A DNA stretch of 63,347 nt, filler included, from Octopus bimaculoides (Eukaryota): assembly GCF_001194135.2 (NCBI RefSeq). It is 6 parts of 5 records of this genome, joined end to end, with 100 filler letters (N's around TTAATTAATTAA, not from the genome) between each part and the next. Parts side by side here need not be neighbours in the genome. Positions count along the whole stretch, not along the records: positions 44,595 to 49,710 come from NC_068981.1; 5 more parts are not named here. One strand, written 5' to 3'. Below are positions 44,495-49,810 of this stretch, piece after piece (within the stretch, counting starts at the first letter, position 1; each line of letters opens with the position of its first letter). Under the pieces are notes generated by a model. The model saw only the letters and a list, made by a program, of their open reading frames with translations. It made no database searches and was not told the DNA's origin. A program made the position numbers and the translations under genes.

Positions 44495-44603
44495 NNNNNN
44501 NNNNNNNNNNNNNNNNNNNNNNNNNNNNNNNNNNNNNNTTAATTAATTAANNNNNNNNNNNNNNNNNNNNNNNNNNNNNNNNNNNNNNNNNNNNATATAT
44601 ATA

Positions 44604-44772
44604 TACGACGGGCTTCTTTCAGTTTCCGTCTACCAAATCCACTCACAAGGCTTTGGTCGGCACGAGGCTATAGTAGAAGACAACTTGCCCAAGGTGCCAC
44701 GCAGTGGGACTGAACCCGGAACCATGTGGTTGGTAAGCAAGCTACTTACCACACAGCCACTCCTGCGCCTAC
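44604..44772 (-). mobile_element. SINE family B 5' half
   Basis: Near-consensus reverse-complement head. Confidence 0.9.
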
Positions 44773-45356
44773 ATGTATATGTATGTATGTCTATATGGAT
44801 TGATCGATAGATCGATGGATTGATGGATCTGATTTCATTCCATTGCTCTTCACCGTTTCTTTTTAGCTGCGATACTTCAGGCTGCAAAATGATCACATTA
44901 CTTTCCGTTTGAATGATCACTAAAGAGCGAAAAACTCTGATCAGTGACACAGTTAATCATCCGATTGGAATGCACAAATACAGGCTTTTTCGTGTATAAA
45001 CTATTCTTTCTATCGTTTGCACATCAAAAATTTTTAAAAAATAAAGGTATAGAGATAATATTATTACTTTATGATCCCGTCAATGTCATTTTTTATCTAT
45101 AATTTCATTTTCTAGTTTCTGTTTTTCCATTTTTATTCTTTATATCTTATTGTATTCTTTTGATAGAGGATAGGATATTTTTGCGTGATGCAATTTTGAG
45201 GTATAATGCTTCAAACACTGTATGTAAACTTAGAAAGAAAAACACTTTTTTTATAGCTAGAAAACTCTCAACGTTGACCTATAAATCAACTAAATACGCT
45301 TTCATATAAGTAACGATTAGATTTTTAATTACATATCTACTAATACATCTTGATTG

Positions 45357-45393
<37 letters not shown>

Positions 45394-45655
45394 TTTTACA
45401 CTTCTCTCGTCGCACATTTAAACAGTAATTCATATTCGCCATTGATACTTCGAACTGAAGGTAATCTATATTATACACTCTTACTGCATTATTTTCGACT
45501 TTTTTATATCACGTTATAACGATTTCCTTTTCGTTTTCGTATTTGGTTCGCAAGATTATTTGTGTGAATTCGTGTGTTGAAACAAATTTTGTAGTGTCTA
45601 GGGATAGTCATTATGCAAATATCAATAACACACGCACTGGTCATTTCCTGTCTCA

Positions 45656-45725
<70 letters not shown>

Positions 45726-46440
45726 NNNNNNNNNNNNNNNNNNNNNNNNNNNNNNNNNNNNNNNNNNNNNNNNNNNNNNNNNNNNNNNNNNNNNNNNNNN
45801 NNNNNNNNNNNNNNNNNNNNNNNNNNNNNNNNNNNNNNNNNNNNNNNNNNNNNNNNNNNNNNNNNNNNNNNNNNNNNNNNNNNNNNNNNNNNNNNNNNNN
45901 NNNNNNNNNNNNNNNNNNNNNNNNNNNNNNNNNNNNNNNNNNNNNNNNNNNNNNNNNNNNNNNNNNNNNNNNNNNNNNNNNNNNNNNNNNNNNNNNNNNN
46001 NNNNNNNNNNNNNNNNNNNNNNNNNNNNNNNNNNNNNNNNNNNNNNNNNNNNNNNNNNNNNNNNATATATATAATACAAATAATAAATGAGTATATGCAT
46101 ATATACGTACATGTATGTGCATACCTACATCTACCTGTATATATAGATGCATATCTGGGTACAGGATGTTGCAAACAAAACGTAGACAAAAAAAATAATA
46201 ACCAGAGTACAGAAAACACACAGGCCACATAGAGAACATTTCCTTCATCAGCTGCCACCATTCTAACACTGGCGTTTCGAGGAGTTATATATATATATAT
46301 ATATAAGAAGTTGACCAGTGCGTGTGTTATTGATATTGGTGTAATGACTCTCCTAGACACAATTAGGCTTTCTTTTTCTGAGTTCTATTTTTGATTTTAT
46401 ACTTTACAGAATTATTATGGCGTATTATATCTTGTATCTA

Positions 46441-46790
46441 TCTTTTATCTTTTACTTGTTTTCGTCATTAGACTGCGGCCACGCTGGGGCACCGTGTTGA
46501 GTAATTTTAGTCGAATGAATCGACCCTAGTACTTATTCTTTTTCAAAATCTGGTACTTATTCTATCGCTTTTGCCGAATCGTTATGTTACGGGGACGTAA
46601 ACACACCAACACCGGTTGTCAAGCGGTGGTAGAGGACTTTTTACGTCCGCGTAACTTAGCACTTCGGCAGAAGAGACCGATAGAATAAGGGCCAGACTCT
46701 TAAAAAAAAAAGTAAGTACTGATTCGATTGGTTCCATTAAAAGCCTGTCAAGGCAATGCTCCAGCATAGCCGCAATCTATTGACTGATAA
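46441..46790. mobile_element. Two SINE family B 3' halves, head-to-head inverted
   Basis: 46441-46632 is a minus-strand 3' half; 46633-46790 is a plus-strand 3' half. Confidence 0.8.
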
Positions 46791-46872
46791 TTATTAAAAT
46801 TTTGAAATTATCTTAGGAGTTTGAATCCTAGGTTTATCTTTTCACCATGTTTGCCCTTTTTTTTTCCTGCAG

Positions 46873-46927
46873 GTGATCCACATCAAGGTTTTGTATGAAG
46901 GGGATTGATGCATGCACAGATTCCAAG
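46873..46927 (+). other. Candidate 55-nt spliced exon, stops in all three frames (non-coding or pseudo-exon)
   Basis: Acceptor TTTTTTTTTCCTGCAG, donor AAG|GTAGGT; frame 0 reads VIHIKVLYEGD*. Confidence 0.3.
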
Positions 46928-47028
46928 GTAGGTGTTTCGAATTTCATAGATAACATATATAGAATTCTATTGTATCTGTTGAGACCATCAGGGTTGACTG
47001 CTATTTCCATGTAACCTATACGGACGTT

Positions 47029-47288
47029 GGAGGCGCGTGGTTTAGTGGTTAGGGTACTGGACTCATGATCGTAAGAGTGTGGTTTCAATTCCTGGACCAG
47101 GCAATGCGTTGTGCTCTTGAACAAAACACTTCATTTCACGTTACTCCAGTCCACTCAGCTGGTAAAAATGAATAATCCTGTGACGGGCCGGCGTCCGGTC
47201 CAGGCGGGGTATTTATACGCCATGGAAACTGGGAAACCGACCCTTATGAGTCAGCATGAACTCGAGAAGGTAACTTTACCTACCTACT
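47029..47288 (+). mobile_element. SINE family C (tRNA head, V-SINE-like central segment)
   Basis: GGAGGCGCGTGGTTTAGTGGTTAGGG...GGTTTCAATTCC; CCTGTGACGGGCCGGCGTCCGGTCCAGG; tail AACTTTACCTACC. Confidence 0.8.
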
Positions 47289-48573
47289 TCACTATACAGA
47301 CGTGGTAAATATAGCAGTCAACTCTCCCTCAAATCTTCAAAATGAAAAACAAACGAAAAGAAAAAAAAGAAGAGCTATATATACACACATACATATACAT
47401 ATACATATATATATGTATATATATATATGTGTGTATATATATGTATATTTATATATATATATATNNNNNNNNNNNNNNNNNNNNNNNNNNNNNNNNNNNN
47501 NNNNNNNNNNNNNNNNNNNNNNNNNNNNNNNNNNNNNNNNNNNNNNNNNNNNNNNNNNNNNNNNNNNNNNNNNNNNNNNNNNNNNNNNNNNNNNNNNNNN
47601 NNNNNNNNNNNNNNNNNNNNNNNNNNNNNNNNNNNNNNNNNNNNNNNNNNNNNNNNNNNNNNNNNNNNNNNNNNNNNNNNNNNNNNNNNNNNNNNNNNNN
47701 NNNNNNNNNNNNNNNNNNNNNNNNNNNNNNNNNNNNNNNNNNNNNNNNNNNNNNNNNNNNNNNNNNNNNNNNNNNNNNNNNNNNNNNNNNNNNNNNNNNN
47801 NNNNNNNNNNNNNNNNNNNNNNNNNNNNNNNNNNNNNNNNGTGTGCGTGTGTGTGTTTGTGTGTGTGTGTGTGTGGTCTTTTTCTTGATTGCATGTTAAT
47901 TCCAGAAAACCGTTGATTCCTTGAGATCATCTTTTCACATTGAGAATCGGTAACAATTGTTACCACGCATTTGTTTAACTTCTCTCAAAGTGAAAATACT
48001 TTCGGTAAATCGAGCACTTAACGTGGATGGTATTTGATAAACGTTTCTATGCTTTTATTGTCTAAATGTATATCATTCGTCACGCGATATTATTTTCTTT
48101 CATACTATTTATCCAAATTACCCGAGGCCATATATATTTCCTACTCCATACTTCTTTTCCATAAGTATGGCCAAGCCTTCGAAACTATGTTCATTGAGAT
48201 AGAAACATGTGTTCACAAGTGGCGTATTTGTTTTTCGTTTCTCCTGTCAAAAAAAAAAAACAGAAAAAAAAACAATTCTCTTTTGCTTAATGTTGTGTCA
48301 GTTCCGTAAAATACTTCATTACCTCTTGTATTTTTATTTGTAGCCCACATTTATTCGTAGTCACTGGCCACTCTGAGTTTTTACTCTCTACTCATTTACA
48401 TCCCCGCCTTCTTTTCACACACATGCATATATGGAAAAGTCGAAATTGTGATGATTTCTGGTCGATAGTAGTTGAGAAACGGAGTGTGTCCACGTCTATT
48501 GTGTGTCTTTTTCCTGTTTACTATACGTTCCTTTGTCGTCCCTCTATGCTACATTTCTTCATATATTGTATAT

Positions 48574-48605
<32 letters not shown>

Positions 48606-48635
48606 NNNNNNNNNNNNNNNNNNNNNNNNNNNNNN

Positions 48636-48892
48636 AAGTTTGTGAGGGAGAGACAGACCTCTCTATCCAGCTGGCAAGCTACTTCAGGCTGATGACGAGC
48701 AAAGACTCAGAAACATGTCCCTGAATGCTGGCTAGGCTGGGTGGGGGAGCTTGTCTCCCCTTCACAAACTTAAGGACACAGTAATTGTGTCAAGGCCGAC
48801 AGGAAGCGGTCCAGCTTCCTAGGGCTAAACAGCAGTAGTGTATTCCCTTATTGGGATTGTCACATTAAGTTGACAATATACTACAACTTTAT
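48636..48892 (+). ncRNA. Structured element with a type-I hammerhead ribozyme at the tip of a long hairpin
   Basis: TTCAGG-CTGATGA-C-GAG[CAAAGA]CTC-A-GAAA-CATG-TC-CCTGAA (48683-48725); stem I extends imperfectly to AAGTTTGTGA(48636)/TCACAAACTT(48771); three further hairpins downstream. Confidence 0.75.
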
Positions 48893-49055
48893 ATATATAT
48901 AATTTTTTTTATTCTTTTACTTGTTTCAGTCATTTGACTGCGGCTATATATATATATATATATATGGGAGAATATACAAAAAATAACAACAGACGAGGAC
49001 AGGTGGTGTAAATAACAAAAGTATATATTAGTATGACGCTCGGGAATACGGAAAG

Positions 49056-49092
49056 TCTTTGACGTTTCGAGCTACGCTCTTCAACAGAAAGA
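49056..49092 (-). ncRNA. Minimal hammerhead-like motif in a Penelope-type repeat
   Basis: Minus strand: TCTTT-CTGTTGA-A-GAGC[GTA]GCTC-GAAA-CG-TC-AAAGA; A6>U core change; palindromic ACGT stem III. Confidence 0.5.
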
Positions 49093-49497
49093 ATACGGAG
49101 ACAAGGAGAAAAACACGGAGAAAAAAAATTGAATAGTGTTCAGTCAACGGTCAATCATAATACGTTTGTGTGTGTGAGAGAGAGAGAGTACGTACATACA
49201 TGTATACACACATACGTACATACATGCATACATGCACGCACGCGCACATACACACACACACACACACACAACCACGACGTTTCGATTCCATTGATTTACA
49301 ATCACCGTCAGGAAGGTGTCGTAAGAGTACAATATGCCAGTGGAAAGCAAAGATTCTCATACATTAATACAAGGAAGAGATAAGCCAGCTGATCGAGCAA
49401 GTGGAATATTTACGTTTTACATGTACTCAAATATGTCATAAGTAAATAGACACCACCAGCTTTTTTTTTTTTTTTTTTTCAATTATACAAATATAAA

Positions 49498-49701
49498 CTG
49501 AAATGTTCTTGACTTTAAGGGTATCGCGAAAGGCCTGGTTGGAGGCCAAACCTTACGAGTTCTTTTACAGGGCTTAGAAAAACTGAAAGGATGCTGTAAG
49601 TGTGTGAATCTGAGAAGGGAATATGTTGGATAAAATTATAATTAACTGAGACACCTGTATTTTCTTTTACCCAAAGCAAGGAGCGTTTCACCACTCCTCG
49701 T
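49498..49701 (-). mobile_element. Tc1/mariner-type MITE (family of 7904-8110), left TIR eroded
   Basis: Interior matches 26104-26328; ends CCACTCCTCGT. Confidence 0.75.
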
Positions 49702-49810
49702 GTGTGTGTANNNNNNNNNNNNNNNNNNNNNNNNNNNNNNNNNNNNNNNNNNNNTTAATTAATTAANNNNNNNNNNNNNNNNNNNNNNNNNNNNNNNNNN
49801 NNNNNNNNNN

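What the first reader, a model, noticed from the sequence alone, without database searches (positions are those of the whole stretch)
48636..48892. Hammerhead ribozyme capping a long G:U-rich hairpin in a compact, highly structured element
Seen: canonical CUGAUGA and GAAA core, GUC cleavage triplet and palindromic ACAUGU stem III. Stem I continues for roughly 45-50 bp, and many arm differences are G:U-compatible (CTCTCTATCCAGC with GCTGGGTGGGGG), a pattern expected from RNA-level rather than DNA-level pairing. Downstream are GACAC/GTGTC, AGGAAGC/GCTTCCT and ATTGTCA/TGACAAT hairpins. The first stem II pair is C-A in this copy. Known: minimal type-I hammerheads with palindromic stem III occur in Penelope-like elements and retrozymes and can cleave as dimers; retrozymes make circular RNAs. 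Inference: a non-coding, self-cleaving retrozyme-like mobile RNA. The 5' end is lost in a gap. This is my best candidate for an undescribed system here.
Basis: partly seen in the sequence, partly recalled or inferred. Interest (0 to 1): 0.85.

Follow-up and report, generated by a model that had tools for sequence, protein, structure and literature searches.

The report
Solo hammerhead-ribozyme retrozyme-like repeat copy
This is a roughly 254-base non-coding mobile-element copy carrying a genuine animal-type hammerhead self-cleaving ribozyme at the tip of a long RNA hairpin; it fits an already described class (animal non-LTR retrozymes, the small repeats that depend on Penelope-like elements), so it is a new member of a known kind and not a new system.

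Summary
A complete type I hammerhead lies at 48683-48725 (+), with cleavage predicted after C48719. Helix I continues as a hairpin of 46 pairs (48636-48771). A well-folded 3' domain follows (48773-48889).

A covariance model built only from four experimentally characterised retrozyme hammerheads plus one metagenomic hammerhead finds the site full-length. It scores 32.4 bits (E about 5e-9); the next best hit in the piece scores 10 bits. Rfam's own hammerhead models do not hit it.

The ribozyme is not "minimal". It has the canonical metazoan architecture:
- a 6-bp helix I
- a UAC/U internal loop
- a 4-position helix II with loop CAAAGA
- a 1-bp helix III with a palindromic CAUG loop

This matches axolotl HHR_Amex1, which cleaves well only as a dimer. 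The one defect is a C.A mismatch at positions 10.1/11.1.

The G:U argument is weak: 7 G:U against 3 A.C. No RT/EN remnant, no second copy and no pol III B box were found in the piece. (TA)n abuts both ends. No other copies could be reached, so copy number, tandem arrangement and within-family covariation remain untested.

Verdict: a solo, possibly dead, monomer of a retrozyme-class element. It is a new member of a known kind and of modest interest.

The parts
48636..48679 (+). Distal 5' arm of the extended helix I. It begins at the first base after the assembly gap, so the true 5' end is unknown.
   Evidence: Pairs with 48727-48771 in the MFE fold. Inverted repeat I1.
48680..48682 (+). Loop 1: the 5' side (UAC) of the asymmetric internal loop, opposite U48726. 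This is the position of the loop 1 / loop 2 tertiary contact in canonical type I hammerheads.
   Evidence: Same geometry as Ax330 (UGC/U) and N79/Sm1 (GUAC). The contact itself was not tested.
48683..48688 (+). Proximal helix I, 5' strand (UUCAGG), 6 bp with 48720-48725.
48689..48695 (+). Catalytic core C3-A9 (CUGAUGA).
48696..48709 (+). Helix II with loop 2: C10.1.A11.1 mismatch (48696/48709), GAG/CUC 3 bp, loop CAAAGA (48700-48705).
   Evidence: marks 10.1/11.1 as the only non-standard pair..
48710..48719 (+). Core G12 A13 A14 (48710-48712); helix III A15.1-CAUG-U16.1 (48713-48718, palindromic ACAUGU); C17 (48719). Predicted cleavage is 3' of 48719.
48720..48771 (+). 3' strand of helix I: proximal CCUGAA (48720-48725), then the distal arm with 7 G:U pairs in total.
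48773..48889 (+). 3' structured domain: hairpins 48775-48791 and 48801-48820 (within 48794-48826), and a Y-shaped stem 48835-48884.
   Evidence: MFE -42.4 kcal/mol, z -4.97, 0 of 200 shuffles as stable.
48583..48605 (.). (TA)n tract upstream, followed by the 30-N gap (48606-48635).
48890..48901 (.). (TA)n tract that abuts the 3' end of the element.

Best explanation
Positions 48636-48889 (+) are one genomic copy, a monomer, of a non-autonomous retroelement of the retrozyme class that carries a hammerhead. It is non-coding, at least 254 nt long, and was probably mobilised by a Penelope-like element (PLE).

Shown here: the sequence encodes a complete canonical metazoan type I hammerhead.
- Helix I is extended into a clamp of 46 pairs.
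- Helix III is only 1 bp plus a self-complementary CAUG loop.
- A separately folded 3' domain follows.

Inferred mechanism, from published retrozymes:
1. Read-through transcripts of tandem copies fold co-transcriptionally.
2. Two neighbouring hammerheads pair through ACAUGU/ACAUGU to make a 6-bp intermolecular helix III.
3. Each cleaves 3' of C17. [quoted passage not shown]
4. The long helix I holds the two ends together, and a host RtcB-type ligase closes the circle.
5. The circle is copied by a PLE reverse transcriptase and inserted by its endonuclease, which favours (TA)n.

This particular locus shows a single copy with a C.A mismatch at the base of helix II. It is therefore most likely an immobile, weakly active or inactive descendant.
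For: Hammerhead identity:
- Model R1 was built without this sequence, from four experimentally characterised retrozyme hammerheads plus L155. It matches 48678-48730 full-length at 32.4 bits, E about 5e-9. The next hit in the piece scores 10 bits.
- 97 metagenome loci chosen for holding the same core pattern reach at most 25.9 bits, apart from the training locus.
- In a joint alignment 97.2% of helix cells pair (0 of 500 shuffles reach this). The window sequence contributes compensatory pairs in all six helix I positions.

Architecture:
- It equals Ax330/HHR_Amex1: 6-bp helix I, URC/U loop 1, 14-nt helix II with CAAARA loop, ACAUGU helix III.
- That ribozyme cleaves poorly as a monomer (6% per hour) and well as a dimer (PMC7229834).
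- A monomeric helix III costs +4.7 kcal/mol here. The ACAUGU duplex gives -4.6 to -6.0 kcal/mol.
- Validated retrozymes also extend helix I, with 20-32 flank pairs.

Element properties:
- At least 254 nt, 48% GC, no ORF. These fit the published 170-400 nt, under 50% GC and non-coding.
- No RT/EN remnant lies within about 0.8 kb on either side.
- (TA)n abuts both ends, while TA tracts make up only 3.6% of the resolved bases. PLE endonucleases favour (TA)n (PMC8557442).
- Monomer copies of retrozyme families are common and dispersed (bioRxiv 10.64898/2026.07.22.740005).
Against: - Only one copy is visible. The defining tandem arrangement is not seen in resolved sequence, and the 5' side is lost in a gap.
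- No other family member could be found. Repetitiveness, within-family covariation and a partner PLE are therefore all untested.
- Rfam's hammerhead models give no hit even at E up to 10.
- The conserved G10.1-C11.1 pair is replaced by C.A, which may impair catalysis.
- The source organism is unknown.
- There is no expression or cleavage data.
Confidence: 0.62

Rival explanations
1. It is a fragment of an autonomous Penelope-like element: a solo or truncated pseudo-LTR. Its hammerhead would normally process PLE transcripts.
For: - PLE pLTRs always carry type I hammerheads with a short palindromic helix III (PMC4209133; PMC6765202).
- Retrozyme families are sister to pLTRs.
- (TA)n flanks fit PLE target bias.
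- PLE insertions often break short-read assemblies, and a gap abuts the element.
Against: - Metazoan PLE hammerheads are min-HHRs: helix I 4-5 bp, helix II 6-8 bp, an extra nucleotide after A9, and no loop-loop nucleotides. Examples seen here are L150, L127 and L108.
- This one has the canonical 6/4 architecture, which the literature assigns to retrozymes and not to PLEs or Terminons (legend of Supplementary Fig. S1).
- No RT or GIY-YIG remnant appears in any frame within about 0.8 kb on either side or in any ORF of the piece.
Confidence: 0.17
2. It is a SINE-like retroposon of the Sm-alpha/Sj-alpha kind. It would be dispersed, transcribed from its own pol III promoter, and its hammerhead would trim the transcript.
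For: - The hammerhead resembles the S. mansoni Sm1-derived N79: UAC bulge 6 bp from the core, loop 2 CAAAGA against CAAAUA.
- A single dispersed copy is seen.
- Non-LTR retrozymes have themselves been called a kind of SINE (PMC7761336).
Against: - No B box is present, and there is only one A-box-like site with 2 mismatches.
- ARAGORN finds nothing tRNA-like.
- The 5' end, where a promoter would lie, is missing in the gap.
Confidence: 0.1
3. It is a domesticated host hammerhead, like the conserved intronic or 3'-UTR hammerheads of amniotes, acting in processing of a host transcript.
For: It is an isolated motif, as for the human and rodent examples.
Against: - No gene or exon is detectable in the piece.
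- It lies in microsatellite- and repeat-rich DNA between transposon fragments.
- The C.A defect and the dimer-only helix III argue against a selected single-copy ribozyme.
Confidence: 0.04
4. It is a DNA-level palindrome (foldback or MITE) whose hammerhead-like core arose by chance.
For: - The arms are an inverted repeat that also folds significantly on the - strand (z -4.1).
- The G:U excess is not significant.
Against: - No pattern match occurs in 100 shuffles.
- The CM E-value is about 5e-9, and about 20 bits come from helices and loops not specified by the pattern.
- Features not searched for all match known hammerheads: the 6-bp helix I, the UAC loop, the CAAAGA loop and the palindromic loop 3.
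Confidence: 0.02

Closest known systems
Axolotl non-LTR retrozyme Rtz_331 with hammerhead HHR_Amex1 (Cervera & de la Pena 2020, PMC7229834)
   Same: - Type I hammerhead with a 6-bp helix I and a 3-nt/1-nt internal loop (URC/U).
- 4-position helix II with a 6-nt CAAARA loop.
- Identical GAAACAUGUC, meaning a 1-bp helix III plus a palindromic CAUG loop.
- Helix I is extended by distal pairing.
- Non-coding unit of a few hundred nt.
- 33 of 53 hammerhead positions are identical.
   Different: - C.A instead of G-C at 10.1/11.1, and U7 instead of G7.
- The helix I extension is much longer and more regular: 46 against 32 flank pairs.
- A single copy is seen here instead of tandem arrays.
- No similarity outside the ribozyme.
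- The host appears to be an invertebrate. The literature says invertebrate retrozyme hammerheads usually have a more stable helix III and cleave as monomers.
Schistosoma mansoni Sm-alpha SINE-like element hammerhead (Sm1; engineered form N79)
   Same: UAC bulge 6 bp from the core, loop 2 CAAAUA against CAAAGA, 4-bp helix II, and a dispersed SINE-like non-coding carrier.
   Different: - Sm-alpha has pol III promoter boxes. None were found here.
- The comparison sequence N79 has an engineered long helix III.
Minimal hammerheads (min-HHR) in pseudo-LTRs of Penelope-like elements (Cervera & de la Pena 2014, PMC4209133; Lunse et al. 2017, not held in the library)
   Same: - Type I topology.
- Palindromic 15.2-16.2 / loop 3, which implies dimer action.
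- A nucleotide (C48696) directly after A9 that can be read as the typical unpaired base.
- (TA)n target context.
   Different: - Here helix I is 6 bp (min-HHR: 4-5 bp).
- Here helix II is 3-4 bp (min-HHR: 6-8 bp).
- Loop-loop nucleotides are present.
- There is an extra A before G12.
- No adjacent RT-EN ORF.

Membership tests
Hammerhead ribozyme, type I | Conserved core C3 U4 G5 A6 N7 G8 A9 / G12 A13 A14 / A15.1-U16.1 / H17 | tested here: met
   CUGAUGA 48689-48695, GAA 48710-48712, A48713-U48718, C48719.
Hammerhead ribozyme, type I | Three helices around the core, with helix I open and helices II and III closed | tested here: met
   A full-length match to structure model R1, which was built without this sequence (32.4 bits). 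All helix I pairs and 3 of 4 helix II pairs form.
Hammerhead ribozyme, type I | Conserved G10.1-C11.1 pair | tested here: not met
   C48696.A48709. The experimentally active Ax353/HHR_Amex2 also has a mismatch (U.U) here, so this is not disqualifying.
Hammerhead ribozyme, type I | Match to the curated Rfam hammerhead covariance models | tested here: not met
   No hammerhead family is reported at E up to 1 on the piece or at E up to 10 on 264 nt. The likely causes are the 1-bp helix III and the C.A mismatch.
Hammerhead ribozyme, type I | Self-cleavage 3' of position 17 | not testable with these tools
   Needs in vitro transcription of monomer and dimer constructs.
Canonical metazoan type I hammerhead (retrozyme type) | Helix I 6 bp, helix II 4 bp, helix III 1-2 bp capped by a small palindromic loop (PMC4209133) | tested here: met
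   6 bp; 4 positions (one of them C.A); 1 bp plus CAUG.
Canonical metazoan type I hammerhead (retrozyme type) | Loop 1 / loop 2 tertiary contact nucleotides | tested here: inconclusive
   Loop 1 UAC/U and loop 2 CAAAGA sit at the same positions as UGC/U and CAAAAA in HHR_Amex1 and as GUAC and CAAAUA in N79. The contact itself cannot be tested.
Metazoan non-LTR retrozyme | Tandem repeats (dimer to multimer) of a 150-450 bp unit, each with a type I hammerhead | tested here: inconclusive
   No second copy exists in the resolved piece. The 5' neighbour is a gap. Monomer copies of retrozyme families are known.
Metazoan non-LTR retrozyme | Non-coding, no LTR/PBS/PPT, GC below 50%, highly self-paired RNA | tested here: met
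   No ORF over 28 aa within the element. GC 48%. Fold z -7.0.
Metazoan non-LTR retrozyme | Multi-copy family in the genome, expressed as linear and circular RNA | not testable with these tools
   No eukaryotic genome or transcriptome collection was available. Indirect searches found nothing.
PLE pseudo-LTR min-HHR | Helix I 4-5 bp, helix II 6-8 bp, no loop-loop nucleotides | tested here: not met
   6 bp and 4 positions, with a canonical loop 2. Contrast L150, L127 and L108.
PLE pseudo-LTR min-HHR | Adjacent RT plus GIY-YIG ORF | tested here: not met
   No Pfam RT/EN hit in ORFs or in six-frame translations of the flanks. Stop density is random. The test is limited by gaps at 47465-47840 and 48606-48635.
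Sm-alpha-like SINE | Internal pol III A and B boxes | tested here: not met
   No B box at up to 2 mismatches, and one weak A-box-like site. The 5' end is missing.

The most novel reading that the evidence does not exclude
The family may be an invertebrate retrozyme lineage that uses the amphibian-style, dimer-only hammerhead together with an unusually long (about 46 bp) near-perfect helix I.

The run of four U.G pairs is 48660/62/64/66 opposite G48747/45/43/41. It amounts to four A-to-G changes clustered within 7 nt of one arm. These could be inherited footprints of A-to-I editing of the double-stranded RNA transposition intermediate. If so, they would be direct genomic evidence of an RNA-duplex stage in retrozyme spread.
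Probability: 0.06. Interest if true: 0.5.

Novelty: new member of a known kind. Interest (0 to 1): 0.25.

Why it matters
It adds one more lineage to the known animal hammerhead-bearing retroelements. The host is apparently an invertebrate whose retrozymes are not described in the literature I could search. It pairs a dimer-dependent, amphibian-like ribozyme with an exceptionally long helix I clamp.

If the family proves abundant and expressed, it would give a compact natural scaffold for circular-RNA biogenesis. It would also give another test case for the dependence of retrozymes on PLEs. It does not open a new class of system.

Tried and rejected
- Rfam scans of the piece and of the element alone: no hammerhead hit, only microsatellite-driven miRNA-like noise.
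- Search for other copies. Every route below failed, so no within-family covariation analysis was possible:
  - Concatenated six-frame peptides of the element against 5.8 billion proteins: nothing.
  - A family-specific DNA pattern in metagenome, viral and prokaryotic genome collections: 0 hits.
  - Look-ups of flanking ORFs in public assemblies: nothing.
  - A SINE-derived peptide, to identify the host: nothing.
  - Repeat k-mers in the literature: nothing.
- Generic core pattern. The 61 viral-contig loci were not examined, since a 17-base pattern with a variable gap is expected to match by chance there. Of the 97 metagenome loci, only L155 passed a strict stem filter; about five more (L150, L127, L108, L112, L130) show hammerhead-like helices, four of them typical PLE min-HHRs.
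- A 12-nt identity and a long collinear alignment at 44851-45043 looked like a decayed second copy. It is not significant: nhmmer finds nothing, and the score is the top of about 70 windows.
- G:U excess as evidence of RNA-level selection: 7 against 3, not significant.
- An ADAR origin for the U.G cluster: 3 of the 4 sites have a 5' G, which ADAR disfavours (from memory). This cannot be tested with one copy.
- MAFFT with N79 included misaligned the 3' half, so N79 was left out of the model.
I re-ran them with stops replaced by X.
- My first helix III energy used coordinates off by one. This is corrected.

Full report
**Context.** The piece (44595-49710) is AT-rich at 36% GC. It is full of (TA)n and (CA)n microsatellites, assembly gaps and transposon fragments.
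- It holds no convincing gene. All ORFs of 60 aa or more are microsatellite or random frames with no Pfam domain.
- The stop density is random in all six frames.
- It looks like metazoan intergenic or intronic DNA. From memory, some repeats resemble cephalopod repeats, but I could not test the host.

**Observation.**
- The pattern CTGATGA-N(6-30)-GAAACATGTC occurs once, at 48689-48719 on the + strand, and in none of 100 dinucleotide shuffles.
- In standard numbering: C3-A9 is 48689-48695, helix II with loop 2 is 48696-48709, G12-A14 is 48710-48712, A15.1 is 48713, the CAUG loop is 48714-48717, U16.1 is 48718 and C17 is 48719. Cleavage is predicted between 48719 and 48720.
- Helix I runs for 46 pairs (48636-48688 with 48720-48771), 7 of them G:U.
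- The 256-nt + strand folds at -108.9 kcal/mol (z -7.0). The - strand folds at -93.0 (z -5.25).
- For the hairpin alone the values are -68.0 against -56.0 kcal/mol.

**Is it a real hammerhead?** Rfam says nothing. No hammerhead family is reported at E up to 1 on the piece, or at E up to 10 on the 264-nt element. I therefore made an independent test.
- The supplement of Cervera & de la Pena 2020 (PMC7229834) prints four retrozyme constructs whose hammerheads were assayed: coral Amil224, mussel Mg353, and axolotl Ax353 and Ax330.
- I aligned their hammerhead domains with one hammerhead recovered from a metagenome contig (L155).
- I annotated helices I-III and built covariance model R1, leaving the window sequence out.
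- With filters off, R1 finds 48678-48730 (+) full-length at 32.4 bits (rough E 5.5e-9). The next hit in the piece scores 10 bits.
- As background I used 97 metagenome loci that all contain the exact string GCTGATGA-N(8-20)-GAAACATGTCC. Apart from the training locus they reach at most 25.9 bits, and most score 10-17 bits. About 20 bits here therefore come from helices and loops and not from the core string.
- In a six-sequence alignment, 97.2% of helix cells are standard pairs. The figure is 20-46% when partners are slid, and 0 of 500 shuffles reach the observed value. The only unpaired cells are position 10.1/11.1 in the window copy (C.A) and in Ax353 (U.U).
- This is covariation between families. 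It shows the sequence fits the fold. It is not within-family covariation.

**What kind of hammerhead?** It is not the "minimal" PLE type.
- Metazoan PLE min-HHRs have a 4-5 bp helix I, a 6-8 bp helix II, an unpaired nucleotide after A9, G10.1-C11.1, and no loop-loop nucleotides (PMC4209133).
- I saw exactly such motifs in contigs L150, L127 and L108, for example CUCC-CUGAUGA-U-GAUCU-GACA-AGAUC-GAAACAUGUC-GGAG.
- The window copy has the canonical metazoan layout. Helix I is exactly 6 bp, followed by a 3-nt/1-nt internal loop (UAC/U). Helix II has 4 positions with a 6-nt loop CAAAGA. Helix III is 1 bp with a palindromic tetraloop.
- Position by position it parallels axolotl HHR_Amex1 (GCUGC ACCUCA CUGAGGA GGUC CAAAAA GGCC GAA ACAUGU C UGGGGU UGCUU), with 33 of 53 positions identical.
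- It also shares the UAC bulge and the CAAAUA-like loop 2 with the S. mansoni-derived N79.
- The literature assigns canonical type I hammerheads to retrozymes, and min-HHRs to PLEs and Terminons.

**Consequences for activity.**
[quoted passage not shown] It cleaves 6% per hour as a monomer but efficiently as a dimer.
- In the window copy, forming the monomeric helix III costs +4.7 kcal/mol: -65.2 goes to -60.5 (which corrects).
- The ACAUGU self-duplex gives -4.6 to -6.0 kcal/mol. Dimer-dependent cleavage is therefore expected.
- The C.A mismatch at 10.1/11.1 departs from the highly conserved G-C pair. However, Ax353/HHR_Amex2 carries a U.U mismatch there and still cleaves.
- The sequence CUCA-GAAA could derive from CUCG-GAAA by CpG decay. 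That is inference and cannot be checked without a consensus.

**The long hairpin.**
- Validated retrozymes also continue helix I beyond loop 1, with 20-32 pairs between 60-nt flanks. This copy has 46 pairs from 53 nt. The design is the same, only longer and more regular.
- Mechanistically (inference), the unit-length RNA released by two cleavages has the 3' arm of helix I at its 5' end, and the 5' arm plus the ribozyme at its 3' end. A long helix I therefore clamps the 5'-OH and the 2',3'-cyclic phosphate together for ligation. RtcB circularised up to 80% of axolotl monomers, against about 3% self-ligation.

**G:U argument.**
- Transition-type differences between the arms give 7 G:U pairs on the + strand.
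- There are 3 A.C/C.A mismatches (48649/48758, 48657/48750, 48659/48748), which would be G:U on the - strand.
- The one-sided p is about 0.17. The strand is fixed by the ribozyme, not by the G:U count.
- The four alternating U.G pairs at 48660-48666 are a striking cluster, but they cannot be interpreted from one copy.

**Element type.**
- There is no second copy or fragment in the piece (nhmmer; R1) and no tandem repeat of the unit.
- No RT/EN remnant lies within about 0.8 kb on either side.
- There is no pol III B box.
- The element abuts (TA)n on both sides (48583-48605 plus the gap, and 48890-48901). TA tracts are 3.6% of the resolved bases. PLE endonucleases show (TA)n bias. This is mild support for PLE-mediated insertion.
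- Size (at least 254 nt), GC (48%) and lack of coding capacity fit non-LTR retrozymes.
- Monomer copies of retrozyme families are frequent and dispersed, and are thought to be immobile offspring.
- I therefore read this locus as a solo monomer of a retrozyme-class family (confidence about 0.6).
- The main rivals are a truncated PLE pLTR (about 0.17) and an Sm-alpha-like SINE (about 0.1). These three are close relatives, and a genome-wide BLAST would separate them.

**Limits.**
- No tool reached eukaryotic genomes, and all attempts to find other copies failed.
- Copy number, tandem arrangement, within-family covariation, the 5' end, the partner PLE, expression, cleavage and circles all remain untested.

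**Novelty.** This is a new member of a known kind. The searched literature has no paper on hammerheads or retrozymes in cephalopods. However, type I hammerhead repeats are described as widespread across metazoan phyla. Interest is modest.

Noticed in passing
L155 (Ga0308181_1012963), reverse strand 84-114 and 1201-1231: Two identical hammerheads (CUGAUGA GGCC CAACGA GGCC GAAACAUGUC, 6-bp helix I) lie 1117 nt apart in a tandem unit. The unit also carries CCCTAA-type telomere-like repeats about 200 nt downstream, plus two short internal tandem arrays. It resembles the 3' region of endonuclease-less, telomere-associated PLEs, or else a large retrozyme.
   Followed up: partly
L150 648-699, 805-859, 973-1029; L127 964-1115, 1308-1363, 1939-1994; L108 6426-6478, 6778-6829, 7054-7106: Several textbook PLE-type min-HHRs occur per contig: helix I 4-5 bp, an unpaired U after A9, a 5-6 bp helix II, and GAAACAUGU. 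Some are on opposite strands. This is probably host (eukaryotic) DNA within metagenomes.
   Followed up: partly
L112 322-373 (-): A hammerhead-like motif, CUGAUGA GUGC AACUAA GCAC A GAAAC, has an extra A between C11.1 and G12. This is the same oddity as A48709 in the window copy.
   Followed up: no
window 46436-46795: A foldback/MITE-like element with nested inverted repeats, for example 46565-46601 with 46640-46676 (81% complementary). Its two ends are also inverted copies of each other (...CAGTCATTAGACTGCGGC...).
   Followed up: partly
window 48900-48946: A 45-nt fragment matches the left end of the 46436 foldback element. It sits between two (TA)n tracts, immediately 3' of the hammerhead element. 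The same microsatellite seems to have taken more than one insertion.
   Followed up: partly
window 44605-44770 (-) and 47030-47250 (+): These stretches look like tRNA-derived SINEs, with B-box-like GGTTCCGGGTTCAGTCC and GGTTTCAATTCC. ARAGORN calls no tRNA. A peptide from one of them found no protein homologue.
   Followed up: partly
window 48636-48889: The element is strongly CpG-depleted: 3 observed against 14.6 expected (o/e 0.21). This is the lowest of all 254-nt windows in the piece (median 0.95). GpC is normal (14). The G:U pairs are not in CpG-decay contexts, so the cause is unexplained.
   Followed up: partly
window 44873-44884: There is a 12-nt identity (TACTTCAGGCTG) with loop 1 / helix I / the start of the core, inside a loosely collinear alignment at 44851-45043. 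It is not significant by nhmmer and is probably chance.
   Followed up: yes
window 49197-49265, 47371-47467, 46073-46156: Sub-threshold Rfam 'miRNA' hits (mir-297, mir-3149, mir-466 and others) all fall on (CA)n / (TA)n / TACA microsatellites. They are low-complexity artefacts.
   Followed up: yes
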